This document shows positions 9,901 through 48,153 of a DNA stretch of 64,000 bases, in pieces. The position numbers were made by a program, and so were the translations under genes. The stretch is from Macrostomum lignano. Taxonomy: Eukaryota. Every line of letters begins with the position of its first letter. The stretch's first letter is position 1. The notes beneath the pieces were generated by a model, which saw only the letters and a list, made by a program, of their open reading frames with translations, had not been told where the DNA came from and made no database searches. Location of the stretch: assembly GCA_002269645.1 (NCBI GenBank), contig NIVC01000070.1, forward strand, positions 620,001 through 684,000, given 5' to 3'.

Positions 9901-12900
9901 GAAGTCACTCTGTAATTAAACAATGACCAGGTGTGAAGTCACTCTGTAGTCAACTAGACAATGACCAGGTGTGAAGTCACTCTGTAATTAATAATGACCA
10001 GGTGTGAAGTCACTCTGTAAATGGAAATGATTTCATCCTTGAGAAAAATATGCGCTAATTCAAGAGCTCGGAGGTGGGCGGTCTCACCTGAATGTCGAAC
10101 ATACTGGAAGGATCAATCTTCACTTTGAATTCTCGCATTACAAAATCGGCAAATTTTCGTTTAGCCTGGGACTTCACTTTGACCAGCTCGCGCAGGACGT
10201 GCTCGTTGTCTTGAAAGTCGGTCAGCTGGCGGAGCTGGTCCAGATCGGTGATCCAAGCCGGCCCGATCTTGTCGCTGAGCAGGTCGCTGAGTCCGGGATT
10301 GCACAGCAGCAGCCAGCGGCGAGGCGTGATGCCGTTGGTTTTATTCTGGAATCGCTCGGGCCACAGCTCGTAGAAGTCCTTGAAAACGTGCTTCTTGATG
10401 AGGTCGGAGTGGATTCTGGAAAGTCAAGGACGGTAAAAAACTGAGGATCTGGGAGGCTGGCCCAGCAACTACAGGATCTGGGAGGCTGGCCCAGCAACTA
10501 AGGATCTGAGAGGCTGGCCCAGCAACTGAGGATCTGGGAGGCTGGCCCAGCAACTGAGGGTCTGGGAGGCTGGCCCAGCAACTGACACTCTGGGAGGCTG
10601 GCCCAGCAACTGAGGATCTGGGAGGCTGGCCCAGCAACTGAGGATCTGGAAGGCTGGCCCAGCAACTGAGGATCTGGGAGGCTGGCCCAGCAACTGAGGG
10701 TCTGGGAGGCTGGCCCAGCAACTGAGGGTCTGGGAGGCTGGCCCAGCAACTGAGGGTCTGGGAGGCTGGCCAAGCAACTGACACTCTGGAAGGCTGGCCC
10801 AGCAACTGAGGATCTGGGAGGCTGGCCCAGCAACTGAGAATCTGGGAGGCTGGCCCAGCAACTGAGGATCTGGGAGGCTGGCCAAGCAACTGAGGATCCG
10901 TAAAAAATCTCACCTGGCGACTCCATTAACAGCGTGGCTGCCAACCACGCACAGGTAGGCCATGTTGATGCGCTTGCAGCCGTCCTCTTCAACCAGGCTC
11001 ATCCGCCTGATGCGATCCATGTCGCCCGGATACCGCTCGGATACGTAGGCCAGGAAGCGCTGATTGATGTCGTAAATTATCTCCAGGTGTCTGGAAGAAA
11101 TATGTTAATTGTTGTATTGAAGCGTATGATGAGAATCGTTTAAAGAAAAATAAATAGATCATTTAATTATGTCAAAAATATTCGGACCATTATGATCTAG
11201 ATCATCTAAAGTCGAGTCACTCAGTTCTTCAGTTCTAAAGTCATTAAAGGATCAGCAGTTTTGGGCCATCATAAATTTGGGTCATGCAGTTCTGGGTCAT
11301 CAATGAATTTGGTCATGCAGTTCTGGGTCATCAATGAATTTTTGGTGATGCAGTTCTGGGTCATCAATGAATTTTGGGTCATGCAGTTCTAAGTCATTAA
11401 TCAAGTTTGGGTCATACAACTCTGGGTCATCAATGAATTTTGGGTCATGCAGTTCTGAGTCATCAATGAATTTTGAGTCATGCAGTTCTGGATCAAAATG
11501 AATGATGGGTCCTGCAGTTCTGGGTCATCAATGAATTTTGGGTCATGCAGTTCTGAGTCATCAATGAATTTTGAGTCATGCAGTTCTGGGTCATACAGTT
11601 CTGAGTCCTCAATGAATTATGGGTCACGCAGTTCTGGGTCATCAATGAAGTTGAGGTCACGCAGTTCATCAAGATTTTAAAATCCAACTAAATCAATAAA
11701 AAATTCACCTTGGCAAGCACTTGGCCAGAGTCTGCACAGGCCAGCGCTCCAGAGCCTCAGGCAGTATGGTGTGATTCGTATAGGCAAACGTGGCAACGCA
11801 GATGCTCCAAGCCGCATCCCAGGCCAGCTTCTCCTGATCGATGAAGATTCGCATCAGCTCGGGTATGGCTAAGCTGGGATGCGTGTCATTCAACTGAATG
11901 GCTACTTTGTCGGCGAAATTATCGAAACAATGATTGTAGGATTTCGAATTGCGAAATCTTCGAATAATATCCTGCAGAGTAGCCGCTACCAGGAAGTACT
12001 CCTGCTTGAGTCGCAGCTCTTTGCCCTCAAAGAAGTTATCGTTAGGATAGAGCACTCTGCTGATATTCTCAGCCTGATTGCGGTCGCACACGGCCGAGAT
12101 GTACTCGCCGGAGTTGAACGAGTGCAAATTGAAGCTCTGGGGAGCTTTGGCGGTCCACAGACGCAGCGTGTTGCAGTTGTTGTTGCCAAAGCTGCATAAG
12201 GGGTGGCAGTTTATTGAGTTCAAGACCGAAGGTCAATAAAGTTCAGATTAATATAAGGCAGAGGGAGCTGCATTACATTTCAATTTAATCGATACATATC
12301 GGCTACTATGACCAGCGTTACATTTTATATTTTCGATACACATCGGCTACTATGACCTGCATTTAAATTTCTATAGATTCGATACATATCGGTGGCTAAG
12401 GCCTGCATCTACTGACAAGGCGAGAGCTCACCCAGGCACTGGCGTGTCATACGGCATGGCCAGCACAGTCTGTGCGTCAACCCAGCGCTTCGAGCCGTCC
12501 GGTCCGACATCAACGCGACCATAGAAACTAATCGGCAGCAGGTACTCCGGCCGGGCCTTCTCCCACGGATTTCCGAATCTCAGCCAATCGTCTGGCTCCT
12601 CGACCTGTAAACCAAATTCATGCATCTTGCTGTTAAAAGTCTACTTGAAGTAATACGTTCAGCAAAGAGAATCTCTAGGTCCCTAGGGGCCTAAGGGGGT
12701 CGCTTCACAAGCTCTAAATTTCCCAACCTTGAAAACCTATGAAGCTTATGAAGTCGCCTGCTAAAATGGTTTAGTCACTAGCGTCGCGCCCAGATTCGTT
12801 GCAGGTAACACAAAAAATAGAACTGAAAGAAGTGACTCTAGAGGACTCTAAAACGACGAGATTTCGTGGAACAGGGCGCCAAAAAGTCGCCGTCGTTTGA

Positions 12901-15900
12901 GTCGGCAAAGTCGCTAGAGACACCGATGGAAGTGTCTCAAAACCTCCATATCCATAACTTTTCGTTGTCATATTGACTCATATCTGTAGGTATGGCGGAA
13001 AACCAACCTGCCATCCATCCGCAATCTTCTGCTGGAAGATGCCATAGTCGTAGCGAATGCCGTAGCCATAGGCGGCCAGGCCCAGCGTGGCCATGGAGTC
13101 CAGAAAGCAGGCGGCCAACCGGCCCAGGCCTCCATTCCCCAAGCCGGCATCGTCTTCGATCTCTTCAATATCCTCCAAGTCCAGGCCGAGTTGGTAGAGC
13201 GCCTCCTCTACAGCTTGGGTGAGGCCCAGGTTAGCCATTGTGTTGGTCAGGGTTCGGCCCATGTAGAACTCTAGCGATAGATAGTACACTCTCTGCCAAT
13301 TCGGAGAGCAAAAAATAATTTTCACTAAGCATTCGGCTACTCTCAGTAGTCACCTCCGCAATAAATTCAATTTTAGATTAACTTCTTAGAGGTAAACATG
13401 ATTTGTTTAAATACTACTGAAGGTTTGTTTATTTTTGATAAAATGTCTTTTCTTTAGAGATTATTTTCTTTAAATTTATAGAATAATAGAAAAAAAACTA
13501 AACAGGGATACGTAGGTCATGGTCAATAGGCATTTAAAGCATTAATTGCTGATTTTTGTGAAGATCAGTTAAGCCACAGTCTATCAACATCTGGTTTCTG
13601 AGTAGTCAATGAACAATGAAGAAATTGAATATTCTCCAGAAATTCAACACTTATTTTACCAAACTAAAGCTACACCTGTCAATCGGAATTTGAACTTCTT
13701 TTTGGACAATAAGGGCCTCCTTCGCTGCAGGGGTCGCCTGTCCACCACATTTTAATTCGAGACTAACAATCTAATTCTATTGCCGCATCCTGACTCAATT
13801 CAAACAGCTGGCTCACGAAGCTAGCAATGAAGCTAGTTGCCATTGTGGCATTGGAGACACTCTTCATTAGATCAGAGAAAGGTACTGGGTATTGAAGGGC
13901 TGTCAACGCGTAAAGCAGGAACTGAAGCTCTGCGTAGTCTGCAAGAAAGTTTTCTGTGGCTCCACCTCAACCTGGCTTTTGGTTGTCGGACATCTGTGCT
14001 TTCTAGACAGCTGTTGGCCTCAATCTAGCAGGACTGTATTATAATACTCATACTGCTCAAGAAGGATCGAAGGCATACATCCTATTGTCCACCTGCTTCT
14101 CAACTCAAGCCATACATTTAGAAGAGACTCTCTGACATGACAAAATTGCAGTTTATCAATGCTCTCCACTGCTTTGTTGCCAGGAAAGGTTTCCCTTCAA
14201 TAATTAGTGACAATGCTTTAACCTTCACTGGCACAGTAAGGCGGGACTCGAAATCTATGCCAACAATAAGATACAAAACTTCTTTAATTCCAGAGGCATA
14301 TCATGGTCCTTCATCCCTGCCAAAGCTCCTCGGTAAGGATGGCTTTTGGAAGCGCTTAGTTAAATTTTTGAGGCCTGTGTTTCGAAAGACACTGAATCAC
14401 TCACTGTTCGTGCTAGACCAGCTGTCTACTGTGGTAATCGAAGTCGAAGTGATCATCAACAGCTGTCCTTATCATTACTCTATCACATTTTCTCACTATT
14501 CGGAGACTCATGAAAGAGCCTGATTTACAAAATGAAGTTGTGCTGCTGTTGCCTAAGCATTTAACCTTGCATTGGTGCTCTGAGTCACTTCGGGAAAGTC
14601 TATAGAGATGCCTATGAAATGGCATTAAGAGAGCAATCTACTATCATTTGCAAGGGTTCTCACAAGCCGAAGGCCAGCAGTGGTGCTGGTCGAAGGTGCA
14701 GATGTCACTAGTCTCGGCTAGCTAGGTGTTATTAAGTCGCTGCTTTGTGATCACAATGCTCTGCATTGGTTTTCCTGGCCTAGACTGCCAATTTCAAGGA
14801 GGTGGAGCACACTAGATGCGCAGTTCAGGCCTTGCTTCCCTTGGAGTTCTCTGAGCAATCCTACCTGGGCTGTTATTTCTTTGTCTTTTCCAGTTCCAAA
14901 TTGCTATTTTGTTAATGCTATTTGCATTTAACATTTCATATATAAAATTTATCTCAAAATTATTTTGTTTGGAATCATTATCATTTAGTTTGATCATTTT
15001 TGTTAATTTGGTGACGGTCTACTAATAACCTGTTTTTCTGCTTTTTCTTTTGTTAAATTGTTCTATTTAACTAATACATTAGTTAGAAGTAATACCTATG
15101 ATTATATCTGAAAAAAAATAATTAAATGATAATGTGTTGTCATTTTCACATGTCTAGGGGTGGGATAATATCACATTTTTGAGGCATCAAATTTTTTTTA
15201 TGTTTATAAAAACTAAATTAAATAATAAATAAAATCACACAAAAATGAGTCTCATTATAACTTTTAAATCACTTGCAACACCTGCCAATCTCCCTATTAT
15301 GGCCAAGGTCTAAATTGCACTAAATGTCCCTCTTTCTAACACTAGATTATACTAGCATACTAGATTGTGCCCACACTGCTAGGAGCCGATCTGTTCCAAA
15401 TGCTGCCTAAAATATAGCCACTGGCTATAATAGGCATAAGGCAATATTTCATTATAAAAATAAGCTTTATAGTCATATATTCAACCCTATGGACCTATAT
15501 TTAGTTCATAGACACTTTGTCATCTGCTATTTTGTTATCTATTAGAGATTTAGAGATGCAACATTGTAACATAATAATGTAACAACTATTATAGCTGGCA
15601 AACATTGTGACATAAACACAAATTGAACATGATTTTATATAACAATATCACCCAACTTGCAGATCTATCATACTCAACTATAAAAAGACTTATTGAATCA
15701 GAGATTTTATCACCTCTATAGGAATTTGCTCACAACCCCATAACTATCATAGTATAAAAGCTTCACTTTGAACATATAATGCTTCAATATGAGTAACAAA
15801 AAACCAAATTTAAATTTATGCATTTTTGTTTGGAACCTATAAATTTATCAATCACTTTATAAAGTAACTTTGCCATGGCCTGGTTTAGCTAATAGCTCTC

Positions 15901-19479: not shown

Positions 19480-22400
19480 ATGTTAGTCGTTGTGTCGCTC
19501 CTTTCAGGTCAGTATCTTCTTAAAACAATCATATAATTTTCACTAATTCATTTATTTCATGTGTAATCAAATCTGCTCTAGTCGATATGGCCTACTGCAC
19601 TGGATCAGGATCAGGCATATAATGTAGTAATAGGTCTATATCTTATGGCTTGTTTGTATTAGACTCTTGGTCCTGATGGTTTTAGCTATACTTACAATTT
19701 TATTATAGTGGATTGTTAGGCTATATTCAGGTTTTTCTCCATAGTGTAGTGGGGCAATTCCATATAATTATGGTCGTAACATGACAGGCTATTTTTACTT
19801 ATAAAATGAAATCTAATAATAGAATACACTAAACCAATATTTTAAATGAAAGATTTTTTTGTCAAGAATATTTTTATAGAGTTTCATGTAGATATCATCA
19901 TTAATATAGATGCTATTAAACCTTGAATGGCACTTCTGGTCGTAACGACAGGATTTTTGACAGATAGAAACTAAAAGGTAAAAGTCTTATAACATTTTTC
20001 ATTTTTGATATTTTGCAATAAATTTTTTAAAATTCGACTAAGAACATCTTCAGAAATCATACTCTTTTTGTAGAATATATAAACTCAAAAAGGCAACAAA
20101 GATACAAAAGAAAAGGCAGCCTTATGGTCGTAACATTCTGGTCGTAACATATTTTGTTCTGTCAATTCAGTAACTTAGAGGTACCAATATATTAAAAATA
20201 TAATTGATTATTTGTTCATCAATACTTTTATCTGATGATGCAAGTACTATACTTTTATCTATAGTTTGTTTCAACCTTCCAAAGCTTTCTATTTGTTTTT
20301 AAAAGGTTCACAAACTTAATGATGTCTTTTGCTTAAAAACTGTCCAATTTTTTACAAAAATTACTTTTTGCCACTTGATAGCATACTAATCTAACATTTT
20401 ATCATTCATTTATTCTTAGATTGTAGATGTTACACATAAAAAACATTTGGTAAAAAAATTGGCTAATCAGGCAGTGGCAAGCAAAAATATTGACTTTTTT
20501 CTATTTTCCAAATATGTCCATCTTATATGGAATGAGCCAGTGCATAAAATAGATATAAAAATATAAATTTCTCTTGATTGTATAGTAGAAAAATGAATAT
20601 TTTATAATAATAAAATAATAAATGTAATGTTAGTATTATTAAATAATAATGTATATTATAGTAATAAGATAAAAAACTTGTTTTTAATTAGTGATATTAA
20701 TATATGCTTTTTTGAAAATAGTTAAATTTCTTTTAGTATTGTAAATTTTAATATTATATAATAAGTTTTTATCATATTACTTTTAAACAAAATTTTATAT
20801 ACAAAAATGATCTCATTATATAGAAAGTAGTATTACATATATAGTTACACTACTTCTTATTTTCAAAAAGTCATTATCTTGAATCATGCCAGCAGACAAA
20901 ATGACCACATATTATAAAACATAAGGGGGGCTATACAAAGATGTAAAGGTTTCTAAAGCTTTCAAATTATATAGAAAATAGTTATTAGCTTTACATTGTA
21001 TTTGACATATTATTAGGGCTAAGAGCCTGGATGGAATTCTTGCAGAAAAATCACAACGCGTTATGCGATTGCGAGAAAAAAATGCGATTTTGCGTAAAAA
21101 AAATCCGGAAAAAATGCGTCGCAGAATTTCAGACAAAATTGTTAATTCTTAATATATGCAAAAGTGCGCTTGAGATATTGGATTTTGCAAAAGATAATCC
21201 TACTAGCTAAGATCACGAAGAAAAAAAGAATAAAAAGTAAAAACTAAATAAGGCACAAAAGTAAAAATTTGAAAAAATTCTATAAAAAGTAGAAACTCGT
21301 AACATTCTCTAACATACGTATTTGGACGTAAATTCAAATCACTACATTTTCTTAGAATGCATTTTTCGTTATTGTCTCATTATTTCGTTATTTCGTTATT
21401 TTGCGACGTGCTAAGTACCAAAATAAAAAATGCGACCAATAAAAAATATTTTGCGTGCCATAAAAAAATCGCATAATTCCGTTTGACTTAAGAAATACAA
21501 GAATTCCATCCTGGGCTAAGAGTCAATAGTTCTAACTCAAAAAATGGAAAAAAATATCTCCTCTATCAATAAATACATTTGATTCAAGTACCAAATAACA
21601 TATAGACCTTAAAATAAGTAAGAGTTGCTTTTTTATAATTACTTTATCAGTTGTTTTATCAGTTTAGATTAGCATCCTTTCCTAGCATCATCTCATCTAA
21701 AAGATACTATCTAGAAGGTTTTTATTTGTCCATGTACACAAACCAATAGATAAATTTAGGTTGTAGCTTAAGGATTACATTGCTGATCTTACAATTGAAA
21801 AGTTGGGGATTCAATTTTTGACCCACTTGGAATAGTTTGTGTCCTTGAATAAGGTAGTTATTTCTGCATTGTTTCAGTTCACCCAACTTTAAAATGGGTA
21901 CCTGCATTAGCTGGGGTAATTGAAGGATGTGTGTTGACCCCCAGTCCTTGGACTGAACAGCCATATGTAGCCTTTAGATCTCCCATTTAAAAGCTACTAT
22001 GCATCTATTTATAGCATGTGTAATCAATTATTATTATCATTATTATTATTATTACTAACACTTTTATCAGACTAGAATTTTACTGTACAAATAACCTGTT
22101 CTTGTTTTTTCTCACTCGTGCAGGCAAGCGATTCCCATATAGGGACACGCACAGCTTGCAAGCGGAAGCAAAGTTTGATGGCGAGTTGCTAGCAACAGAC
22201 CCTATTGAGCACATTGAGAATCCCGAATTCGGGCAAGAGCTGGCCTGGGAGCTGGACAAGAAGGCCCTCGCCCAGCACCGGTTGCAGCGGGCCAGCATCA
22301 AGTTGCTGCTGTATGCGATTGATAAACAGACAACGGCTAAGGAACAGGTTGGCTACGTGGTGCTGGATGTTCGGTCAGCTGCTCAGTCACCAGCAGCCGC

Positions 22401-25400
22401 GGTGGCGAAGCCATATCAGCTTTTGCACAGCCGGTGAGTATTGCAGACCAGAGATTGGGGTCATCGAACTGCCAGATCCCCATCAGGTTGGTGGGATCAC
22501 CAACCTAGCGAATTCTATCTAGGTTTCAAAACGTTTCCAGTCATTCGCTGATTACTTATAATTATAATAATGTTAATCCTTACCCTTTAAACAAAAATAA
22601 CACTTTTAGTTACTCCCAGACGCGTCCTGAACTGACCCTAGCTGTGTACACTGACGAGAGTTACCAGCAGCAGCAGCAGCAACAGCAGTCTGATCAGAAG
22701 CAGAAATCAACGAGGCCAATGGCAAATGGCAACGAGTTTGCTGGTAATTTTTTATTTACGTAGTTCCTTTGCTGCGTGTAATGCTTAGATGGAGTGGGTT
22801 CTGGAAGTGAAGTGTTCGATTATGGTGATGTGGATGTGAAGAGTGAGGTGGGTGCAGGGAGTGAGGTGGGCGCAGGGAGTGAGGTGGGCGCAGGGAGTGA
22901 GGTGGGCGCAGGGAGTGAGGTGGGCGCAGGGAGTGAGGTGGGTGCTAGGCAGCAGTTCTCAATAGAAAGCTAGTTATAAAGTGCAAGTTTCCTCATCAAG
23001 TGCAAAGCGCAGTATCTTATCTCCTTCCAGACTCCTACGATTACGATGAAGAGGAGTTCGAAGAGGAGCCTGTCGTGGCCGCAGCTAAGGGGTTTAATCA
23101 CCAACTAAACGGAGAAGCCGAAGATCGACAGCCGGACGCTAAAGATGGCGGAGATGACGGGAAGAGGCCGACTCAACCTGAGCAGCCGCATCCGCCTGCG
23201 GGAGTGTCGGAGGCAGACATGTACCATGCAGCGATGGAGCTGGAGTTGTGGAAGGAGGCAGCCAAAGAGGCATTCGAGGCCGGTCTGAAGCGGCGCGAGC
23301 AGACCCTGGTGATGGCCTTCGCCAGGGAGTTTCGCAGACGCGACGCAGAGCGAGAAGCGGCTCATAAAAAGCGATCAGCGGAGTATGAGCAGCTTACAGA
23401 GAAGTTGCAGGTGCGTTCAAATTTTAGGTTGTTGTCTCAAATCCTTATACCCCAAAAGTTAGTCCTCAAATTAAGGTCATTAGCTTCCCAGATTCTCAAA
23501 TCAGGGTCATTAGCTTCCTAGCTCCTCAAATCAGTGTCATTAGCTTCCCAGCTCCTCAAATCGGGTCATTAGCTTCCCAGCTCCTCAAATCAGTGTCATT
23601 AGCTTCCCAGCTCCTCAAATCAGTGTCATTAGCTTCCCAGCTCCTCAAATCGGGTCATTAGCTTCCCAGCTCCTCAAATCGGGTCATTAGCTTCCCAGCT
23701 CCTCAAATCAGTGTCATTAGCTTCCCAGCTCCTCAAATCGGGTCATTAGCTTCCCAGCTCCTCAAATCGGGTCATTAGCTTCCCAGCTCCTCAAATCAGT
23801 GTCATTAGCTTCCCAGATTCTCAAATCAGGGTCATTAGCTTCCTAGCTCCTCAAATCAGTGTCATTAGCTTCCCAGCTCCTCAAATCGGGTCATTAGCTT
23901 CCCAGCTCCTCAAATCAGTGTCATTAGCTTCCCAGATTCTCAAATCAGGGTCATTAGCTTCCTAGCTCCTCAAATCAGTGTCATTAGCTTCCCAGCTCCT
24001 CAAATCGGGTCATTAGCTTCCCAGCTCCTCAAATCGGGTCATTAGCTTCCCAGCTCCTCAAATCGGGTCATTAGCTTCCCAGCTCCTCAAATCAGTGTCA
24101 TTAGCTTCCCAGATTCTCAAATCAGGGTCATTAGCTTCCTAGCTCCTCAAATCAGTGTCATTAGCTTCCCAGCTCCTCAAATCGGGTCATTAGCTTCCCA
24201 GCTCCTCAAATCAGTGTCATTAGCTTCCCAGATTCTCAAATCAGGGTCATTAGCTTCCTAGCTCCTCAAATCAGTGTCATTAGCTTCCCAGCTCCTCAAA
24301 TCAGTGTCATTAGCTTCCTAGCTCCTCAAATCAGTGTCATTAGCTTCCTAGCTCCTCAAATCAGTGTCATTAGCTTCCTAGCTCCTCAAATCAGTGTCAT
24401 TAGCTTCCTAGCTCCTCAAATCAGTGTCATTAGCTTGCCAAATGGTCAAATTAATCGTAAGAAATTGCAAAAATCATACTAAAGTTGTTGATTACTTTCC
24501 AGCTACATATTTCGTTTTGTATAAAAAAAAACAGGATTTTCGCTCCGTCGACCATATTTTGCTCTGTTTGCCCTATTGCGTCTTAAAACTGTTTTAGCAG
24601 TGCAGTTGAACTCATTGAACTTTATTGAACTTTATTTCAATAAATAATGATAAACAATATATATGTGAAATGAATAAAAAAAATGAATTAATAAATACAT
24701 GAATAGCTTGGCTCTGCTCGTGCAATTGACACCCTTGAGGCCCAACCCCCCAAGGCACAGTAAAGTGTACATGCCATAACGATAAATAAAATTAGGGTCG
24801 CTGTACACTCCCACTCCGTATCCGCGCGCTTGTGTGCCTGCTCAGAGGGGTCGGCGGAATGGGCAGAAATGGCTCTCGCCGGTTGTGTGACAATGTCGCT
24901 TAAAGTGCACCACGGTGCACAGCCCCTGTCTCGAATAAAATAATCAACCCACCTCACTCCCTGCACCCATCTCACTCCCTGCACCCGCCTCACTCCCTGC
25001 AACCCACCCCACTCCCTCCACCCACCCACTTCCTGCACCCACCCCACTCCCTGCACCCGCCTCACTCCCTGCACCCACCCCACTCCCTGAACCCGCCTCA
25101 CTCCCTGCACCCACCCCACTCCCTGCACCCACCCCACTCCCTGCACCCACCCCACTCCCTGCACCCGCCTCACTCCCTGCACCCACCTCACGCTCCACAC
25201 CTTGCAGGCCGCAATCGCAGACGTGGAAGAGAAGGAGCGCCGTCTCGCCAACGGTCAGCGCGACCTGCTCCAACGCCGAGACGACCTACAGCGCCGGCAC
25301 GACTCCCGACTCAAGGAGCTGCAGGACGCGTCCAACCGGATGCAGGCCGACTGTCAGCAGCGCATCGAGCTGGAGCGGGCCCGCTGCCGCCAGCTGGAAG

Positions 25401-35775: not shown

Positions 35776-38139
35776 CAGGGACAACTAAAACCCTCGGGAC
35801 GCGAAACGAGCCAATTCATGGCAAAAAATCTGAGGGGCTCGCTTAAAAGTATTGTTCTATGGCTTTTTCAAGTCTTCTCTGCTATCAGGCATTAACGGTT
35901 AGATTAAATAGTAAAGCGAGGCAATGTCGAGTATTTAATTTAAGGAATAGGAACCAGTGATATAATTACAATGTATTTACAATAAAGTAACCGCCATATC
36001 AACAAAAAACCCAACGGCAAGAAGATAAAGGATGAAAGCGAAGATGAAACTCCAACGGCAAGAAGATAAAGGATGAAAGCGAAGATGAAACTCCAACGGC
36101 AAGAAGATAGAAGCAAATACGGAACTCCAAGGACAAGACGACACAAACAGTCAGTAGCTCGTACATAAAGGAAACGCTGGAACTTCACCTACTGAGCATC
36201 TAACTTCCGAAGCTTTCTATCATGGGATGTCGTCGGTATTGGTGGGAGTTTTGACGAGCGTCTTACTAGTCCTTTGAAAAAAAACGTTGGCTAGCCGACG
36301 GGACACACTGTCCATGCTGAACTGTGTCTTAGTTGGAAAGTAAAAGTCCTTAATAACATAAAACAGCTTCTGCACGCGAGTTGCGCACGTAGGAGAGTGC
36401 AGAATAAAACTGCTGTAGCAGAGACAGGATAAGTCTAACAGCCATTGTGGAGGATGACAAAGCTTTCCGCGAGATAACTCTTCAGTGAATTCGCTGGCTG
36501 GAATGCTCGTCTCTGATATCAAATCTGTTCCTTTGATGCCTTCTTTAGTCGCTGTATAACCTGTCAATTTCCAATTAAGCACGGTTTGAATTGTTTTTAT
36601 GAGATTGTGTAAAACCTCGTTGTGAATTAAATTTTAATTAATATCCAGCTTACCTGCGATATAGTAGAGCGAAGCCATCTCCGAAATGGAAAGCTCCTCT
36701 GATTTAGCAGCACAATTATCAATGGTCGCCAGTTCAATTTCATTCAGCTGTTCATTGCAACATTTGCTCCGATCGTGCTTGTAGTCTGCTAATTCAAGGG
36801 ATGCGAATAATTTCATTTGTCGGAGTCGAGCACTGAGCAGCACTTGCTCCACAGATACATAGTAGTTGCCGCCGCTCATTTGGCGATATACGCCAGCCAG
36901 CCAGCCAGAACGTAGCTGATTCGTGGGTCGGACAAAAGAAACTCACACATCTCACAGGCTCCGCGCAGTGAGTTTACTAGCGCTGACTTGGTCTCGGGCG
37001 TCAATGAATGATGGCGAGCTCGGCCTTTTCCACAATGTGTCGAAACAAACGAATCCGCGAGCGCGCTAAGAAATTGTATGCTTTCATCTTGAACGGAATA
37101 GACTGGTCGCCTGTCCGGATCCCGTAGTCGTGCGTGTAGATCAGGATTTTTACACTTGACAATTTTCCAGAATCTCACTATGGTTTTGAAATCGGTGTAT
37201 GCAGTTTGAATGCACGAATCAGAAAGTTGGGTGAGACAAAAATTCGAACAGACAGGTCTCCATCTTTATCTAACGTAAACAAGTAAACGTCTTCGTTCAG
37301 AATAGCTGTGTTCAGTGCATATCGAGATACGACATCCGAATTTTTCACCTCAGCTCGAAAACCTTCCCATGCCGGCAAAAAATCAAGCAGCTGAAAAGCG
37401 TCCATCTCATCGATGTCGCTGCACCTCGCGTCAGAAAGAACACCGCGCTTTTCGGCCTGTCGGTCTTGGTCTAAAATAAGAGTAAAAATAAAAGTAAGAT
37501 AATTGTGAGCGGCAAAATCGATATGGACGCTAAGTGTTGAGCAATCTTTAAGTTACGTACCTTGGTTCTGAACAAAACACAAGCTAGGAACTCCATTAAA
37601 AACAGAAGGAGGATTAATTGGCCTTTCGGTAGAGTTTTTCTTGACCATTGGAGCATCGCTTGGCCAATGCTTTACGCACACGCCCATATTGTCAGTCACT
37701 CTTAAAATAATAAATTTTGGGTTTCAAGTTGTTTGGACGAGACTGGCATGCAGAATTGAAGCGGAATTATGCAGCAGAAATGACAGCAAATGATCTGGTT
37801 TCTTACCTGGAGAATATTTGGCAGCGCCTTTCTCCATCGCTCTCGCTCCTGTGGATCTCTGGGAAACGCAAATGTCCGTGTTCGAACGGCTTCAGAGTTG
37901 TAATTTGACGAGCACGGAAATACGCTGCACTTTCTTGGCATTTCATCAAGTGAATAAAAAATGCTTCTCTTGATATAGTTCAGCTTAGCTTCACTGCTGG
38001 CCGCAGCTAAAGCAATTTTAATTTGCCTGATAGCAGAGAAGACTTGAAAAAGCCATAGAACAATACTTTTAAGCGAGCCCCTCAGATTTTTTGTCATGAA
38101 TTGGCTCGTTTCGCGTCCCGAGGGTTTTAGTTGTCCCTG
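35776..38139 (-). mobile_element. P-superfamily (THAP) DNA transposon, internally deleted, 2364 bp
   Basis: 116-bp TIRs (35776-35891 and 38024-38139, 1 mismatch) beginning CAGGGAC; TSD TTTGAGCC at 35768-35775 and 38140-38147. THAP domain from ATG 37941 (MPRKCSVFPC...RW...VCVKHW...PPSVF). C-terminal P-like segment YRQMSGGNYYVS is present; much of the catalytic region appears absent. Confidence 0.92.
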
Positions 38140-39026
38140 TTTGAGCCATTTCAAAGGTGCTCGAACGAACCTAAAATAAATATCTAACGAACTTCCAAAG
38201 CTTCAAATAAGCAATGTACGATGTTGATACACAAAAATTCATGGAGATGAATTTTAAAAAGATATCGAGCAGCATCCTGTATAGCAAACCGACGTCCAGA
38301 AAGTGAGATGCTGCGATTTTTTAATGCAAGGGGCCGAAACTTCTTATCCATTTAATTCAATTTAGCATTTCTTCTTACAGATACTTGCAGCCAGCTGGCC
38401 ATGTGTGGTCACTCGGTGTCGGTGCAGGCAGTTCCATGGAATTTCCGTGGCAATTCCACAAACTATCGTTAAACAGCGCATTTTGTTTAGCCTAAATGTG
38501 CATGTGATTTCACCTGTGAAACTAATAAAAGTTTCCAGAACGAATTAATGCTCTTGAGCTCAATTTCAAACGGTATCTTTCTGTTTTTTTGTTATTTCAA
38601 TGCAGCACAAAATTAAAGAAAGTTCCACTTACATTTTCAAATAGTTTAATTATAGACGCAATGAGTAGAGAAAAAGACGCAAACAAATTTGTACGTAAAA
38701 ATGTTGAACGAGGTAATCATTGCAAATCGGGAATACAAAATCAATCATATTTAACAATTGTACCATTGTTAGTCTATCAAAAATCGTTGCTGAATGCATG
38801 AAAGCGCGTAACAATTAAGAGCACATTCAAATTACATTATAAATCATAATATACATAGGAGGTAATTACGATTCCCGGTAACGATACTCAGGTAGCACTG
38901 GTAGTAACTTATAAGGCGTTACATGTAATACGTAAAAGAATTCCAAGGTGATTTCAGATGCCAGTGACTGTAAAGTACATTTGATGCAGTAAACGCCTCT
39001 TTACTACACTCGTGCAGCAAGCAGAG

Positions 39027-41585: not shown

Positions 41586-42404
41586 AGAAGCCAAGATGAC
41601 AAAGGGCCTAAGAAGCCAATAGGGCAAATGGCCTCAGTTAGAGTGCGCTTCAGTTTTCTGGTTTCATGCATAACTAAAGCTAGGGAGGCGTCGCTGTTAG
41701 GGAGGCGTCGGCGTCTATCGGCCAGGCACTGGTCAGGCAAGTCAGCGGCCAGAGTTCATGCTCAACGCGTTCAACAACATTTGGTCACGCATCACCACGC
41801 TACAGAGTTGCAATCAAGCAGCGATGGTGAATCAATCCAGATTCCAGCCTGCGTCGTGAACCTTGTCAACAACAGGCACATTAAATAAAAATTATACATA
41901 CACCGGCGTTGAACAACGTTGCTTGTTGTCCACTAGTTAATAATGAAAATATCAATATAACAATGAAAGAATTGAGTAGTCAGTTAATTCGTACACCTGG
42001 CAAACAGCCTGGTTGCATGACATAAAAAGTAATGGTCAGTTATTTTATATTTACATGCAATTCTGTGAACTGTCTGATTTGCGACAGAACCGTATTTTAA
42101 CATTTTTATCTCAGCAGTGAATTCATAGAAATATATATTTGCACAATAAAAAATATGACGACAACGTAGGACAGTATAATAGGCCTATAAAATTATATAC
42201 ACTTTCTAACCTATACGATTTGATTAACGCATGCTTGAAAAAATAAAACCGAAAACATGCGCAACCAAATGCTAGTAAACTTATAAAGCTTTAAAGAAGC
42301 GTGCGATGATTTTATAGATCCTCTTAAGCTCTGAACTAGAAACCAAACAACTATTTAAGCAAGAAAAGGCCGACAAAGCGCGATGAACCAAAATGAAATC
42401 GAAA

Positions 42405-42545
42405 AAATCGATAAGAAATCGGTAAATCGATAAGAAATCGATAAATCGATAAATCGATAAGAAATCGATAAATCGATAAGAAACCGATAAATCGATAAGA
42501 AATCAAAAAATCGATGAGACACCGATAAATTGATAAATAGATAAG
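42405..42545. repeat. Short ATCGATAA(GAA)-based repeat downstream of the MORC stop
   Basis: Direct inspection. Confidence 0.85.
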
Positions 42546-42678
42546 CAAGACTGAGAATTATTATAAGAAAACACTAACAAAGTTTATACAATGACAGGCT
42601 AGCCATTTCTATTTAATGCCAAGCTGCCCTTTTAAAAGCATAACAAAACGAAGATTCAGAATGCAATTAGCCCTGATT

Positions 42679-45600
42679 TCAGTCGTCATCGATAACAATA
42701 GGCTTAATGTCGATCTCGCCGTCGGACAAATTGGCCTCTTGTGCGTCGCTTACAGCCGCGACATTAGATGAAGATGCGCCAGGCTGTTTTTGCCCGTCAT
42801 CTCTTGGCTGTTGTTGAGCCTGTTTCTTCTGTCTGTCAAGATCTTGCACAACTCTGGCCAGCAGCTGGTCCACCGACTGGTCAGGGAACTCTGGCACTTT
42901 GACAGGGCCGCCGCGGCCGCCGTCAGAATCTGTTGACCAGTCGCTGCTGATGTGGCCGAGCAGTCGGATGACGCTGCATCGGAGGCTGCGCAGTTGGTCC
43001 TGAGTTGTTTTGGCGAACACGTTAGTTATATACAGTTTAACATCGCGTCTGCTAGAAAATGGACTGAGGATCTGGGAGGCTGGCCCAGCAACTGAGGATC
43101 TGGGAGGCTGGCCCAGCAACTGAGGATCTGGGAGGCTGGCCCAGCAACTGAGGATCTGGGAGGCTGGCCCAGCAACTGAGGATCTGGGAGGCTGGCCCAG
43201 CAACTGAGGATCTGGGAGGCTGGCCCAGCAACTAAGGAAAAGTAAACCAACCAAAACAATTGCAGCTCACCTTCACTCGATCGAACCTGGCAGCGGACAC
43301 GGCGCCCTCCCGTTTCACAGCCGCAGGATCAACGGACACAGCAGCAGTTGAAGACTCTGCGGTGGCGGACACAACAGACTGCTCCACTTGAGTAGAGCTC
43401 ATCGCCACGTTGCCACCGCCACTGCCACCGCTGCAGCTGTTAATGTTGCTACTTCTCTCCCGAACCTCCTGCCGACTAGGCTGATGCCGGCCTCCCAACT
43501 GGTGGCTGGCAGTCGAGGAGCTGACTGCGGCAGAAGTGGCCGAAGGCGGATCGAAGCGAGCCCGCTTGCTGCTGGACTCTGCGCTGTGCGAAGCTGCCGA
43601 CTGTCCAGCCGGCCGAGAGTTGGACAGCAGCGAGCGGATGGCGGCCGCCTCATTGCGCCGCCTGGCGGTGGTCCTGGCGTCTCTGACATTTGCAATTATT
43701 GCGAATCAATAAATTCGGTTTAGCGTACTGTTAGTAGCGAGTAACGAATATTAAGGAATCCTATATTTAAATTTACGATGAAACTTTTATAAATGGTTGC
43801 GGCCCAAGGATTAAAAAATGAGATCGTGGGGGTCAGGGTGAGGATTCAGGGATTCACGGTTAAATTTTTTTGGATTCACGGTTCTAATTTTGGGACGCAC
43901 GGTCTGTAATTTTGGGATTCAGAGTTGTAATTTTAGGTTTCACGGTCGTAATTCTACGTTTCACGGTCGTAATTTTGGGATTCACGGTTTAATTTTTTTG
44001 GGATTCACGATTGTCGATTATTAATTTTGAGATTCACGTCTTTGATTTTAAGATTTAAAATTGGGATTTTCGATTCACGGATGGGATTCAGAGATTCACG
44101 GATATGGTTTTGAGATTCACGGATATGGTTTTGAGATTCACGGATGGGATTCTGAAATTTACGGTTGGGATTCTAAGTTTCACGGATGGGATCCTGAGAT
44201 TCACGGTTGGGATTCTAAGTTTCACGGATAGGATCCTGAGATTCACGGTTGGGATTCTGAGATTCACGGTTGGGATCCTGAGATTTAGGACTAGAATACG
44301 CAAGGGGAGCGAGGGAAGCACATGCTGCACTCAACTCACCTGTAGTCCTGCACCATGGACTCCTCGTCCTCGACCTCCTCGGCAATGTCGCAGCGGTTAT
44401 AATAAGCGTCCGGGTTCATCGAGCAGTACCAGGCGCGCTTTTCTATCGAACGAAACTCTTCGTCCGACACGTCCAGAAGCCGGCGCCATTTCTGACAGCT
44501 GTCGCACTGCACCCAGCGCCAGTAACTGGGCGGCGGCGGAGCGGCCGCTGCTGATGAGGCGGCGGCCGAATCAGAGCATCTGTGCAATTCCAGGTACTCT
44601 TTCAGCTTCTGGGTCAGATTTAAAAAGCAGTTGCTGAAAGAGGCGAAAGACATTGGTTGGGATAAATTTAGCTTGCACTGCAGTGCCTGCATAATGACAT
44701 GCAATCCCATCTGTTCTCTTTTACGGCGAGAACATTTAGGAATAGGAATTTGGATTTCGAGGTCAGTATCTTGGGAGTTGGAATGAAATTTTGGGACTCG
44801 GGAATGGAATCTTCGAATTCAAAGTTGGGATGTTAGGATTCAAGGTAGGGATTTTGTAATTTGAGGTTGGGATTTCGGGATTCGAATTTGGGATTTTATG
44901 ATTCGAAGTTTGATATTTTTAGTGTCAAGGTTGGATTTTGGGATTCAAGGTTGGGATTTTGGGATTCGAGTTTGGGATTTTGAGATTTGAGGTTGGGATT
45001 TTGAGATTTTAGGTTGGGATTTTGAGATTTTAGGTTGGGATTTTGGGATTCGAGGTTGGGACTTTGGAATTCGAGGTTTAGACTTTGGGATTTAAAGTTG
45101 GGATGCTAGGATCTAAGGTTATGATTTCGAGTTTCGAGGTTGGGATTTTGAGATTCGAGGTTGGGATTTTGAGATTCGAGGTTGGGATTTTGAGATTCGA
45201 AGTTGGGATTCTGAATTTGAGGTTAGGATTATGGGATTCGAGGTTCGAATTTTGGGGTTGGACACGAGTTTTAAGACTCGAGTTTGGGATATTCGGATTA
45301 GGAGTTAAGAATCGATAATTTAGTTATTGAGAAGATTTTGAACTTCCACATGTTAGATTGGGGCACTGTGGTATTTTTTTAAAGCTCAGGAATGAGAAGT
45401 ATGGGATAAAGGACTAGGATCACGAAAAGATGCAATAAAGCATGCATCAATTAAAGTCTCCTTACCGAAAATTGGCATCCCTAATGAACTCCTGCTTGAT
45501 GTGATTTGGCTCCAGGTGATCAACTTCAGCTATGAGGGCAACGCCACTAGCCAGCTCTGGCTCCTTGACCAGCTTCTCGTACGGCAGGATGAGGCGGTTA

Positions 45601-47505
45601 TTATGATACAGCATTGCCCCATAGTCGGAGTGGTTGGCCGGCAGGACGCCGATTACAACTCGAACTCGATAATTCGAATTCGATCGAAGTTTCAAACGGG
45701 TCTCGTCGCTAGGCGACAGCTTGGGCGAGTAATAGTCTATGGCCCGCTTGGCGAGACACCGCTGCATCAGCTGGGTGCGCACCTTGTGGTTGTTGATGCG
45801 AATTATCAGTCTCGGCTTCATGAACAGAATGCTCAGGTAGGCCTTCAGCGATCGGCTGTGAGTGAGGAGTTCAAATGGGATTTAAAGTTTATTTTATGCC
45901 CAAAGCAGTAAAGCAGTCGAACGCAAAGGCACTCACCGAATAAGCGGGGACACAGAAGTCTGCAACAGCTGCATCCTCTGCACTGCCGGCAGGGCGGCAT
46001 CGGACTGCAGCGTCTCCGAGTTGACAATGTCGCTCCTGTCGCTAACCAGGTCGAGTTCCAACGCCGAACTCGGATCGTCTGGCGAGGTGCGTTTCAGATT
46101 ATAAATCAGTATCCTGGTGCCGTGCTTGCCAATGCGATCGAACTGCGCCAGAACCTCGGATTCGAAACCGCCGAATAGGTCGCAGTGATGAGTGATGAGG
46201 CTGAGAGACTGGGCGCCATCTGGATATGTCTCAGCCAGCTGGTCGTTCACCCAGGAACAGATCGGGAGCACGATGGTGTCAGCGCCGATGCGGGCTAGGA
46301 AGGTCTGCGATAGAAGACCGACAGACTTCACAACGGCATTGTTGGCCAGGCGAGTCTTGGTGAACACGATGGCGTCCTTGCCGATGCGCATTGAGCCTGA
46401 TTTGAAACCGTTGCCATAGTGACCGATTGGCTTGTGGCCCTGCGAGAGGCGGCAGAGAAATTTGGTGCTTTTAAAAATTAATAATGAACAGTGCTTTTCT
46501 GCTCAAATTCATACCGTCATTTGATTGAAAGGTAGATCGTTTTTCATAAAAATTTACATCGTTTCCTGCCTACAAAGGCACAATTGTTACTTTCCAAAAA
46601 ATGTAGATAGTTTTTCTTAGAAATGTAGATTATTTATTTTCTAGAAATGTAAATCGTTTCTTTCCTAGAAATGTAGAATACTTATTTCCTAGAAATGTAG
46701 ATCGTTGCTTTCCTAGAAATGTAGAATACTTATTTCCTAGAAATGTAGATCGCTTCTTTCCTAGAAATGTAGATCGTTTCTTTCCTAGAAATGTAGATCG
46801 TTTCTTTCCTAGTAGAAATGTAGAATATTTATTTCCTAGAAATGTAGATCGCTTCTTTCCTAGAAATGTAGAATACTTATTTCCTAGAAATGTAGATCGC
46901 TTCTTTCCTAGAAATGTAGATCGTTTCTTTCCCAGAAATGTAGATCGTTTCTTTCCTAGTAGAAATGTAGAATATTTATTTCCTAGAAATGTAGACCGTT
47001 TCTCTCCTAAAAATGTAGATTATTTATTTTCTAGAAATGTAGATCGTTTTTTTCCTAGAAATGTAGAATATTTATTTCCTAGAAATGTAGATAATTTCTT
47101 TCCTAGAAATGTGCACCGTTTTTTCAAGAAATACGAGACGATATACGATCGTGCATTTTTATATTGCTGAATCGGTTTTCACCCTGAACAACTAGATTTA
47201 CCAACCTTAACAGGCACTTTGTCGCAATAGCCGAAGCTGAGCATATTATGCAGTCTGTTCAGCTCCATGCCTCTGCCATCGTCCGTAAAGCTCAAAACGT
47301 CGATACCCCGCATCACCTCGTGACGAATGTCAAGGTGAGCGGCTGCGCAGTCGGGATCGTAGGCGTTGTCAACTAGTTCGGCTATGGCCGAAAACACCCA
47401 CAGGTGAGAGGTGGCGTTGGACACCAGGTAGGCTGGATTCGTTCGGGCTGACCGAAGACCGCTGACCTGCAGATCCTGCTGCTGCTGCTGCTGTTCCAAC
47501 TCCAT
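42679..47505 (-). CDS. MORC3: MORC family CW-type zinc finger protein, MORC3/4-like, 6 exons, ~739 aa
   Basis: Exons 47505-47206, 46439-45937, 45855-45466, 44633-44340, 43682-43271 and 42999-42679 join in frame (2220 nt). GHKL motifs AELVDNAYD, FTDDGRGM and GHYGNGFKSGSMRIG; zf-CW WVQCDSCQKWR...WYCSMNPD...C; C-terminal LRSLR..V..LL. The MORC3 versus MORC4 distinction is not resolvable. Confidence 0.93.
43063..43233. repeat. 28-bp minisatellite CTGAGGATCTGGGAGGCTGGCCCAGCAA, 6 identical copies, MORC intron 5; locus 2 of 3
   Basis: Same unit as 10441-10899. Confidence 0.97.
43840..44285. repeat. 21-bp minisatellite CACGGTTGGGATTCTGAGATT, MORC intron 4
   Basis: Direct inspection; degenerate toward the left. 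Confidence 0.9.
44745..45320. repeat. Degenerate 21-bp minisatellite GAGGTTGGGATTTTGAGATTC, MORC intron 3
   Basis: Direct inspection. Confidence 0.88.
46610..47112. repeat. ~24-bp minisatellite TTTCCTAGAAATGTAGA(TCGTTTC/ATACTTA), MORC intron 1
   Basis: Direct inspection; two alternating variants. Confidence 0.94.
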
Positions 47506-47606
47506 GATTGCAGTCAGATGCCAGCCAGCAGCAAATATTTCAAACACATTGTTAACCTGGCTGTAAGCTGTCGATCCAATAAATATTCAAGAACCATTGA
47601 TCTGAC

Positions 47607-48153
47607 GCTGGCCCAGCAACTGAGGATCTGGGAGGCTGGCTCAGCAACTGAGGGTCTGGGAGGCTGGTGGCCTAGCAACTGAGGATCTGGGAGGCTGGCC
47701 CAGCAACTGAGGATCTGGGAGGCTGGTGGCCCAGCAACTGAGGATCTGGGAGGCTGGACCAGCAACTGAGGATCTGGGATGCTGACCCAGCAACCGGGGA
47801 TCTGGGAGGCTGGCCCAGCAACTGAGGACCTGCGAGGCTGGCTCAGCAACTGAGGATCTGGGAGGCTGGCCCAGCAACTGAGGATCTGGGAGGCTGGTGG
47901 CCCAGCAACTGAGGATCTGGGAGGCTGGCCCAGCAACTGAGGATCTGGGAGGCTGGACCAGCAACTGAGGATCTGGGAGGCTGGCCCAGCAGCTGAGGAT
48001 CTGGGAGGCTGGCCCAGCAGCTGAGGGTCTGCGAATCTGGCTCAGCAACTGAGGATCTGGGATGCTGACCCAGCAACCGGGGATCTGGGAGGCTGGCCCA
48101 GCAACTGAGGGTCTGCGAATCTGGCTCAGCAACTGAGGATCTGGGAGGCTGGT
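47607..48153. repeat. 28-bp (some 31-bp) minisatellite of the CTGAGGATCTGGGAGGCTGGCCCAGCAA family, ~19 copies, upstream of the MORC ATG; locus 3 of 3
   Basis: Same unit as 10441 and 43063, with more variants. Confidence 0.96.

What the first reader, a model, noticed from the sequence alone, without database searches (positions are those of the whole stretch)
10416..48153. One 28-bp minisatellite at three separate loci, once flanked by an 8-bp direct repeat: a mobile minisatellite?
Seen: CTGAGGATCTGGGAGGCTGGCCCAGCAA forms arrays at 10441-10899 (phosphorylase intron 5), 43063-43233 (MORC intron 5, six identical units) and 47607-48153 (upstream of the MORC ATG). All have the same orientation relative to minus-strand transcription and no shared flanking sequence. 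The GAGGGTCT variant occurs at both locus 1 and locus 3, 37 kb apart. Locus 1 is bracketed by GTAAAAAA (10433-10440, 10900-10907); removing the insert plus one copy leaves a 31-nt intron GTGAGATTTTTTACCGTCCTTGACTTTCCAG. Inference: naked arrays move between loci (eccDNA reintegration, RNA-templated repair, or mobilisation in trans by an 8-bp-TSD transposase). Caveat: loci 2 and 3 show no convincing TSD, and an A-rich 8-mer can recur by chance.
Basis: partly seen in the sequence, partly recalled or inferred. Interest (0 to 1): 0.72.

Follow-up and report, generated by a model that had tools for sequence, protein, structure and literature searches.

The report
Dispersed intronic minisatellite family in a flatworm
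A 28-bp tandem repeat really sits at three unrelated places near two genes of the flatworm Macrostomum lignano, once with a genuine 8-bp flanking duplication, but the copies are old and fixed, so it looks like an ordinary dispersed satellite family, not an active mobile element.

Summary
The window is Macrostomum lignano (Mlig_3_7, NIVC01000070.1:620001-684000). Minisatellites make up 31% of it, and almost every intron carries its own private array.

The 28-bp family is one of only two families found at more than one locus. Its three arrays share no flanks. They do share complex internal variants, including a three-base substitution that always follows the same neighbouring variant. They are therefore related by descent or by exchange between loci.

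The 8-bp duplication GTAAAAAA at locus 1 is unlikely to be chance (p about 6e-4 per locus). It is not flanked by terminal inverted repeats.

Two other genome copies of the TBP-MORC region carry the arrays at loci 2 and 3 with identical junctions. Only copy number and internal make-up differ. No array was gained or lost among the three copies, whereas a hAT-type MITE and a Helitron-like element were. The orientation bias is not significant, and a second family occurs inverted.

Best reading: array DNA was copied anciently into nearby chromosome breaks, then expanded and contracted in place. This is a new member of a known kind (dispersed euchromatic satellite families). The decisive empty-site test for locus 1 could not be run.

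The parts
10441..10899 (+). Locus 1: 28-bp minisatellite array, 16.4 units. It starts CTGAGGATC and ends CTGAGGATC plus C. It lies inside phosphorylase intron 5.
10433..10440 (.). Left copy of the 8-bp direct repeat GTAAAAAA (putative target duplication).
   Evidence: chance p about 6e-4 per locus
10900..10907 (.). Right copy of the 8-bp direct repeat GTAAAAAA.
10416..10913 (-). Intron 5 of the glycogen phosphorylase gene (498 nt). It is 31 nt once the array, the extra C and one repeat copy are removed.
43063..43238 (+). Locus 2: 6.3 units, six of them identical, in the last intron of MORC (about 43002-43270, minus strand). It has the same start and end phase as locus 1.
47607..48164 (+). Locus 3: about 20 units including 31-bp variants, with degenerate terminal units. 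It lies about 100 bp upstream of the MORC ATG (47505).
22841..22942 (+). Array A of a second multi-locus family (18 bp, GAGTGAGGTGGGCGCAGG), in an intron of a +-strand CEP120-like gene.
24947..25191 (-). Array B of the same 18-bp family, inverted, in another intron of the same gene. Its start and end phases nearly match those of array A.
35776..38139 (-). hAT/P-like DNA transposon. It has 116-bp terminal inverted repeats (99% complementary) starting CAGGGACAAC, a perfect 8-bp target duplication TTTGAGCC (35768-35775 and 38140-38147), and a weak THAP domain.
51230..51970 (.). hAT-type MITE (terminal inverted repeat TAGTGATGGATCAAAAT, target duplication GTTTTTTG/GTTTTTTT). It is absent from the paralogous copy NIVC01000713.1, which shows an empty site.

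Best explanation
The 28-bp repeat is a dispersed minisatellite family of Macrostomum lignano, not a self-mobile element. Array DNA, either a short seed of about 1.3 units or a block of several units, was copied from an existing array into chromosome breaks at nearby loci by break repair. Candidate routes are templated insertion, ectopic synthesis-dependent strand annealing, and replication template switching.

At locus 1 the break was staggered by 8 bp, or the repair re-copied 8 bp of the target. That produced GTAAAAAA on both sides inside a pre-existing micro-intron.

Each copy then grew, shrank and homogenised in place by unequal exchange, with occasional exchange of variants between loci. 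These events predate the divergence of the genome copies now present in this species.

Shown: the arrays are related, the flanks are unrelated, the duplication is real, the arrays are old and fixed at loci 2 and 3, and copy number turns over.

Inferred: the repair route, the local (cis) bias, and the likely lack of function beyond lengthening introns.
For: - One family occupies three loci with no shared flanks.
- Shared complex variants: the triple substitution CTGAGGATC>CTGACACTC, each time preceded by a GGGTC unit, occurs in window locus 1 and in locus 3 of copy NIVC01001301.1. GGCCAAG, the TGG insertion (31-bp unit), GAGAGG and CTAAGGA are also shared across loci.
- The 8-bp duplication has p about 6e-4 per locus, 0.002 for three loci and 0.02 for all 35 arrays. 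It is the only one among about 35 arrays.
- Loci 1 and 2 start and end at the same unit phase. The two arrays of the 18-bp family do so as well, although they are inverted. This is what independent expansion of one copied seed would give.
- Both multi-locus families are clustered: 2 kb apart for the 18-bp family, 4.4 to 37 kb for the 28-bp family.
- In three genome copies, all arrays sit at identical junctions and differ only in copy number: 6.3/14.4/6.3 units at locus 2 and 19.9/22.9/25 at locus 3.
- Micro-introns are reported in flatworms including M. lignano (PMC6530080), and an 81-nt intron is seen in MORC.
- Break repair, eccDNA and interlocus gene conversion are the routes already proposed for euchromatic satellite spread (PMC11610590).
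Against: - The repair route is not observed directly.
- A clean 8-bp duplication is more typical of transposase-made staggered cuts than of template switching.
- Shared multi-unit variant patterns fit transfer of long blocks better than a single short seed, so later conversion between loci has to be invoked as well.
- The phase concordance is only suggestive: about 0.02-0.05 for the 28-bp family and about 0.08 for the 18-bp family, from rough counting.
- Genome-wide copy number and distribution are unknown, so the apparent local clustering could simply reflect a very abundant family. A fourth locus exists in an ARL3-like gene.
- The paralogous copy of locus 1 could not be fetched, so insertion there is inferred, not shown.
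Confidence: 0.45

Rival explanations
1. eccDNA route. Tandem arrays loop out as circles by recombination between units. A circle is linearised and ligated into a break, at locus 1 a filled-in break staggered by 8 bp.
For: - The arrays are naked, with abrupt junctions and no carrier sequence.
- Multi-unit variant blocks are shared between loci.
- The locus-1 insertion lies in an A/T tract, as reported for some Tribolium satellites that are also found in the eccDNA fraction (PMC11610590).
- M. lignano integrates injected DNA at random, independently of the Minos transposase (PMC5730564).
Against: - A randomly linearised circle should give random start phases and no terminal redundancy. Loci 1 and 2 both start at CTGAGGATC and end 7-9 bp into the same motif.
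- Circles have no reason to land within 2-37 kb of the source.
- No new insertion is seen among three genome copies.
- No eccDNA data were available.
Confidence: 0.2
2. Transposon remnant. The arrays are the internal minisatellite of a non-autonomous element (Helitron-like or MITE) whose short arms have been lost or were never recognisable, as with the Helitron minisatellites of C. elegans or the Helentron arrays of oysters.
For: - The window holds a 2868-bp Helitron-like insertion (52274-55141). It is inserted at A^T, starts TC, has a GC hairpin near its 3' end, and carries an internal array. It is absent from both other genome copies.
- Precedents exist: C. elegans Helitron minisatellites (bioRxiv 10.64898/2026.08.08.743475) and molluscan satellites within Helitrons (PMC5139131).
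- Fixed array termini at loci 1 and 2 are what a defined element would give.
Against: - No flank similarity exists at any of the six junctions, and no solo or degenerate units occur elsewhere in the window.
- At locus 1 the 8-bp repeat touches the array on both sides, leaving zero bases for transposon arms.
- Helitrons make no target duplication. Under that model the 8-mer pair would have to be a coincidence (p about 6e-4).
Confidence: 0.13
3. Genuine mobilisation in trans. The array, or a 37-bp proto-unit CTGAGGATC-19 bp-CTGAGGATC, is a tiny non-autonomous element cut and pasted by a hAT/P-like transposase that makes 8-bp duplications. Alternatively, the array filled the gap left when such an element excised, which would leave both duplication copies behind.
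For: - At least four elements in 64 kb have terminal inverted repeats plus 8-bp duplications (21026-21514, 35776-38139, 51230-51970, 58363-61989). One has 99% identical repeats and one is absent from a paralogue.
- GTAAAAAA fits the hAT target pattern NTNNNNAN (own knowledge).
- The C at 10899 is complementary to the adjoining G, as a one-base hairpin footprint would be (weak).
- The termini are fixed at loci 1 and 2.
Against: - The array ends are direct repeats, not inverted ones.
- There is no similarity to the ends of the transposons in the window.
- Loci 2 and 3 have no duplication.
- No presence/absence difference of any array is seen among the genome copies.
Confidence: 0.1
4. RNA route. 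A transcript of the array was reverse-transcribed into a T-rich nick by a LINE endonuclease and reverse transcriptase. In that case the true duplication is A6 and the extra GT is coincidence.
For: The target TTTTTT/AC on the minus strand resembles an L1-type nick site (own knowledge). A retroelement fragment lies in phosphorylase intron 1, at about 13600-14500.
Against: There is no poly(A) beyond the target's own six A's and no polyadenylation signal. The duplication would have to be 6 bp plus a 1-in-16 coincidence. Loci 2 and 3 show neither a tail nor a duplication.
Confidence: 0.04

Closest known systems
Dispersed euchromatic satellite families (Tribolium castaneum Cast1-9; Drosophila 1.688/Rsp-like), thought to spread by eccDNA, interlocus gene conversion or transposons
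   Same: The same repeat occurs as short arrays at many gene-rich loci with unrelated flanks and abrupt junctions. [quoted passage not shown] The candidate mechanisms are the same (PMC11610590).
   Different: Here the unit is 28 bp, not about 170-360 bp. The arrays sit inside very short introns. One copy has a clean 8-bp flanking duplication. The copies seen are old and fixed, not part of recent bursts. The Drosophila example is from my own knowledge, not from a paper read here.
Helitron-borne minisatellites in C. elegans introns (HelitronY1/Y1A 35-bp repeat) and Helitron-associated arrays in bivalves
   Same: A minisatellite of similar unit size is scattered through introns of many genes, is fixed at most loci, and varies in length (bioRxiv 10.64898/2026.08.08.743475; PMC5139131).
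   Different: Those arrays are embedded in recognisable transposon arms. Here no arm is detectable, and at locus 1 there is no room for one.
Molluscan satellite junctions (phBglII400)
   Same: The transitions from array to flank are abrupt, and in one family they fall non-randomly within a palindrome (PMC5139131). Here two or three array ends fall at or near GGATC/GGATCC.
   Different: Only three to four junction pairs are available here, so the non-randomness is not established.
Tandem-repeat-containing MITEs (bivalve DTC84/pearl) and other transposons that carry satellite-like arrays (Drosophila Tetris, a foldback element)
   Same: Short arrays are dispersed together with target duplications. 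hAT-type MITEs are active in this genome (papers listed).
   Different: A MITE has terminal inverted repeats outside the array. None is present here. Those papers were seen only as titles and abstracts.

Membership tests
Dispersed (euchromatic) satellite/minisatellite family | The same monomer in tandem at two or more non-homologous loci | tested here: met
   Three loci in the window, plus an ARL3-like gene elsewhere in the genome seen through a read-through protein model.
Dispersed (euchromatic) satellite/minisatellite family | Unrelated flanking sequences and abrupt junctions | tested here: met
   No flank similarity. The junctions at loci 1 and 2 are sharp, while the terminal units at locus 3 are degenerate.
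Dispersed (euchromatic) satellite/minisatellite family | Variants shared between arrays (common descent or interlocus exchange) | tested here: met
   The triple substitution with its neighbouring variant, and four further variants, are shared across loci.
Actively mobile element (any mechanism) | Presence/absence differences at homologous sites (empty sites) | tested here: not met
   Loci 2 and 3 are filled with identical junctions in all three genome copies, and no array in that 20-kb region differs in presence. Locus 1 could not be tested.
hAT/P-type non-autonomous transposon (MITE) | Terminal inverted repeats | tested here: not met
   The array ends are CTGAGGATC... and ...CTGAGGATCC, which are direct repeats. 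A scan for inverted repeats plus 8-bp duplications finds other elements but not these arrays.
hAT/P-type non-autonomous transposon (MITE) | An 8-bp target duplication at each copy | tested here: inconclusive
   Present at locus 1 (p about 6e-4). Absent at loci 2 and 3.
Helitron/Helentron-borne tandem repeat | Conserved element arms, a 5' TC and a 3' hairpin plus CTRR, insertion at A^T, and no duplication | tested here: not met
   There are no shared arms. Locus 1 has a duplication and no room for arms. A real Helitron-like element in the window (52274-55141) shows what one looks like.
Introner (intron-creating transposon) | The insertion itself supplies or duplicates the splice sites and creates the intron | tested here: not met
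   The duplication lies inside an intron that keeps its own GTGAGA donor, TTGAC branch-like motif and CAG acceptor outside the insert. Locus 3 lies upstream of the start codon.
LINE-mediated retrocopy | A 3' poly(A) tail and a variable A-rich duplication | tested here: not met
   There is no A-run beyond the six A's that are also present at the other side.
eccDNA-derived insertion | The family is present in the circular DNA fraction, and its junctions are permuted | not testable with these tools
   No circular-DNA data are available. The matching start and end phases of loci 1 and 2 argue mildly against random permutation.

The most novel reading that the evidence does not exclude
Macrostomum lignano might have a mechanism that copies whole minisatellite arrays, or a defined proto-unit with 9-bp terminal direct repeats, end to end and without any carrier into nearby introns. 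An enzyme that cuts with an 8-bp stagger may be involved. Two independent families in this window (28 bp and 18 bp) each show two arrays with the same start and end phase. If real, this would be a new kind of array-forming micro-element and a general route by which micro-introns grow into the repeat-filled introns of this genome.
Probability: 0.08. Interest if true: 0.8.

Novelty: new member of a known kind. Interest (0 to 1): 0.4.

Why it matters
How short tandem arrays spread through gene-rich DNA without a transposon carrier is still unsettled. Transposon transport, eccDNA and interlocus conversion are all proposed (PMC11610590). A naked array sitting between two copies of an 8-bp target sequence, inside what would otherwise be a 31-nt intron, is an unusually clean footprint of such an event. 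M. lignano has about 15% tandem repeats (PMC5730564), several genome copies and working transgenesis, so it could serve as a system to test these routes. The practical yield is smaller. The finding explains part of why this genome's introns are long and hard to assemble, and it flags gene models that read into arrays.

Tried and rejected
- An exact scan of JGI metagenome contigs for a 24-mer of the unit gave 0 hits.
- A homology search with the last large phosphorylase exon found nothing closer than 71% identity. A search with the DHX N-terminal exon found nothing. Neither gene is therefore on record for this assembly, and the paralogous copies of locus 1 could not be fetched.
- I tried to walk there through the neighbouring CEP120-like gene. 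The representative search found only a UniProt model from another copy (P0124). That model has no contig on record and is alone in its 90% cluster.
- The ARL3-like protein that contains array-encoded peptide also has no contig on record.
- Reconstructing the MORC gene model by enumerating splice chains failed. Strict donor rules gave 0 chains and relaxed rules gave about 4e16, because the arrays are open reading frames.
- A first null model for the 8-bp duplication was inflated by the window's own tandem repeats. It was replaced by a null drawn from unique sequence only.
- Pfam found no transposase domain in the 35776-38139 element beyond a sub-threshold THAP hit.
- Rfam and tRNA scans of the window found nothing.
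- Single-strand folding of the unit is unremarkable, with z-scores of 0.7 and -1.0.
- Rejected: independent origin of the three arrays (the units are identical).
- Rejected: assembly artefact (the arrays recur at the same sites in three contigs).
- Rejected: a strand-bias argument (n = 3, and the 18-bp family is a counter-example).
Full report
**Observation.**
- Tandem Repeats Finder reports arrays of one 28-bp unit at 10439-10898 (16.4 copies), 43063-43238 (6.3 copies, 99% matches) and 47607-48152 (19.2 copies).
- A search for CTGAGGATCTGGGAGGCTGGCCCAGCAA with up to three mismatches finds 34 units. All are on the + strand and all lie in these arrays. Shuffled sequence gives none.
- GTAAAAAA lies at 10433-10440 and 10900-10907, against the array.
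- Read on the minus strand, the intron is GTGAGA-TTTTTTAC-G-[array]-TTTTTTAC-CGTCCTTGACTTTCCAG. Without the insert and one 8-mer it is 31 nt.
- BLAST of 400-bp flanks shows no similarity among the six flanks.
- A relaxed search finds no solo or decayed units elsewhere in the window.

**Source and setting.**
- The intronless TBP protein encoded at 49709-50365 is present, letter for letter, in GenBank assembly GCA_002269645.1 (Macrostomum lignano Mlig_3_7) on three contigs. One of the fetched stretches is identical to the window, which is therefore NIVC01000070.1:620001-684000.
- Minisatellite arrays with periods of 14-56 bp cover 31% of the window.
- In the phosphorylase gene, mapped with a homologue from another animal, introns 3 to 7 each hold one private array. 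That array makes up roughly 55-90% of the intron.
- This agrees with the published figure of about 15% simple and tandem repeats in this genome (PMC5730564).
- Very short introns are reported for flatworms including M. lignano (PMC6530080), and MORC has an 81-nt intron without an array. A 31-nt ancestral intron is therefore plausible but not demonstrated.

**How the arrays are related.**
- Of about 39 arrays, only two families occur at separate loci: the 28-bp family, and an 18-bp family at 22841-22942 and 24947-25191.
- I split all 28-bp arrays into units, including those of the two other genome copies. This shows a three-base substitution (CTGAGGATC to CTGACACTC), each time preceded by a GGGTC unit. 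It occurs in locus 1 of the window and in locus 3 of copy NIVC01001301.1.
- Four other variants (GGCCAAG, a TGG insertion giving 31-bp units, GAGAGG, CTAAGGA) are also shared between loci.
- Such patterns are unlikely to arise twice. The arrays therefore descend from a common polymorphic array, or they have exchanged units.
- Loci 1 and 2 both begin at CTGAGGATC and end 7-9 bp into the same motif.
- The two 18-bp arrays, although inverted relative to each other, also begin and end at nearly the same phase. The terminal units of one carry the variant typical of the other.
- By rough counting these coincidences have probabilities of a few per cent each. They are suggestive, not proven.

**The 8-bp duplication.**
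- For two unrelated sites in unique sequence of this window, an exact direct repeat of 8 bp or more within 2 bp of both boundaries occurs with p about 6e-4. That is 0.002 for three loci and 0.02 if all 35 arrays are counted.
- Locus 1 is the only array with such a repeat. It is therefore probably a real by-product of the insertion.
- It is not accompanied by terminal inverted repeats.
- There is no A-run beyond the six A's that belong to the repeat itself.

**Other genome copies.** Two further copies of the TBP-MORC region were fetched: NIVC01000713.1 and NIVC01001301.1. They are 79-99% identical to the window depending on the segment.
- Both carry the arrays at loci 2 and 3 with exactly the same junctions. 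Copy numbers are 6.3/14.4/6.3 at locus 2 and 19.9/22.9/25 at locus 3 (window, NIVC01000713.1, NIVC01001301.1).
- The interior of locus 3 is almost completely remodelled in one copy.
- Every other array of the region is also conserved in position and differs only in length.
- Transposons, in contrast, differ between the copies. A hAT-type MITE (51230-51970) has an empty site in one copy. A 2868-bp Helitron-like element (52274-55141) is missing from both.
- The arrays are therefore older than the divergence of these copies. Over that time none was gained or lost here.
- The six identical units at locus 2 thus reflect homogenisation, not a recent arrival.

**Transposases that make 8-bp duplications.** The window holds at least four elements with terminal inverted repeats and 8-bp target duplications.
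- One is a 2364-bp element with 116-bp repeats that are 99% complementary, begin CAGGGACAAC, and are flanked by a perfect TTTGAGCC duplication.
- Breaks of this geometry, and empty donor sites that retain both duplication copies, therefore do occur in this genome.
- None of these elements resembles the 28-bp unit.

**A fourth locus.** The minus strand of the array is an open reading frame. A search with its 28-residue periodic peptide found one protein, a UniProt model of an M. lignano ARL3-like gene whose C-terminus reads into a variant of the same repeat.
- The family therefore exists elsewhere in the genome.
- Only one orientation can be read through, so this hit says nothing about strand bias.

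**Mechanism.** The data fit a DNA-level copy of array sequence into breaks at nearby sites, followed by independent expansion, contraction and occasional exchange.
- Copying by break repair or template switching explains the lack of a carrier, the closeness of the copies, the occurrence of an inverted copy in the 18-bp family, and the matching termini if a short seed was copied. A short flank duplication can arise when synthesis resumes a few bases behind the break.
- Capture of a circular array fragment, or filling of a transposon excision gap, would explain the clean 8-bp duplication better. Both explain the fixed termini and the clustering less well.
- A transposon carrier is disfavoured, because there are no arms and at locus 1 no room for them.
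- An RNA route is disfavoured by the missing tail.
- I see no evidence of function. The most likely effect is simply the lengthening of very short introns.

**Comparison with what is known.** Short arrays of one satellite family dispersed through gene-rich DNA, with unrelated flanks and abrupt junctions, are well described in Tribolium and in molluscs.
- Transposon transport, eccDNA and interlocus conversion are the proposed routes. [quoted passage not shown]
- Minisatellites scattered through introns by Helitrons are described in C. elegans.
- The present case belongs to the first group. It differs in unit size, in sitting inside micro-introns, and in one very clean flanking duplication. I rate it a new member of a known kind.

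**Limits.** The paralogous and orthologous copies of locus 1, the genome-wide census, eccDNA data and population data were all out of reach. The details are in the field on failed attempts. The choice among the DNA-level routes therefore rests on indirect arguments.

Noticed in passing
window 1-64000: Minisatellite arrays (periods 14-56 bp, about 35 different families) make up 31% of the window. Phosphorylase introns 3-7 and most MORC introns each consist mostly of one private array around a very short non-repeat remainder.
   Followed up: partly
window 22841-22942 and 24947-25191: A second multi-locus family (18 bp) lies in two introns of the same +-strand CEP120-like gene, in opposite orientations. 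The start and end phases nearly match, and the terminal units of one array carry the variant typical of the other.
   Followed up: partly
window 35768-38147: A 2364-bp DNA transposon with 116-bp terminal inverted repeats (99% complementary, starting CAGGGACAAC) and a perfect 8-bp target duplication TTTGAGCC. It has fragmented ORFs with a sub-threshold THAP domain, and no transposase domain was recognised.
   Followed up: partly
window 51230-51970: A 741-bp hAT-type MITE (terminal repeat TAGTGATGGATCAAAAT, target duplication GTTTTTTG/GTTTTTTT). The paralogous contig NIVC01000713.1 has a clean empty site, so it inserted after the copies diverged.
   Followed up: yes
window 52274-55141: A 2868-bp insertion absent from both other genome copies. 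It is inserted at A^T, begins TC, has a GC-rich hairpin about 14 nt before an end reading CTTG, and carries a 1.2-kb purine-rich array (53660-54890). It looks like a non-autonomous Helitron-like element with an internal tandem repeat.
   Followed up: partly
window 21026-21514 and 58363-61989: Two further candidate elements with imperfect terminal inverted repeats (1 and 2 mismatches in 14 bp) and perfect 8-bp duplications (GCTAAGAG, ATGGGTCG).
   Followed up: no
window 42199-51200 compared with L002 and L004: The three genome copies are mosaics. Across the MORC body the window is 99% identical to NIVC01001301.1 and 90-95% identical to NIVC01000713.1. From about 47.0-47.6 kb onward it is closer to NIVC01000713.1. 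This suggests recombination or conversion between the copies, or a chimeric assembly.
   Followed up: no
window 48894-49536; L004 (reverse-complemented) 6699-8314: A different 28-bp minisatellite (GAGATTTGTGGGATACTGATCCCAGTGG) between TBP and MORC has 23 copies in the window and about 60 in NIVC01001301.1.
   Followed up: partly
window 49709-50365: A TBP gene without introns (218 aa), identical at the protein level in all three genome copies.
   Followed up: partly
protein P0121 (UniProt A0A1I8J1R5): A public M. lignano ARL3-like gene model ends in about 70 residues that are a translation of this minisatellite. It is probably an intron read-through, that is, an annotation artefact.
   Followed up: partly
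window 13600-14530: ORFs that look by eye like retroelement integrase fragments lie inside the 5.2-kb first intron of the phosphorylase gene. Pfam found no domain in them.
   Followed up: no
window 23463-24440: The 30-bp array in the CEP120-like gene shares a 13-bp motif (TCCCAGATTCTCA on the gene's sense strand, 12 of 13 bases matching) with the sense-strand reading of the 28-bp unit (TCCCAGATCCTCA). This could be chance or distant relatedness.
   Followed up: no
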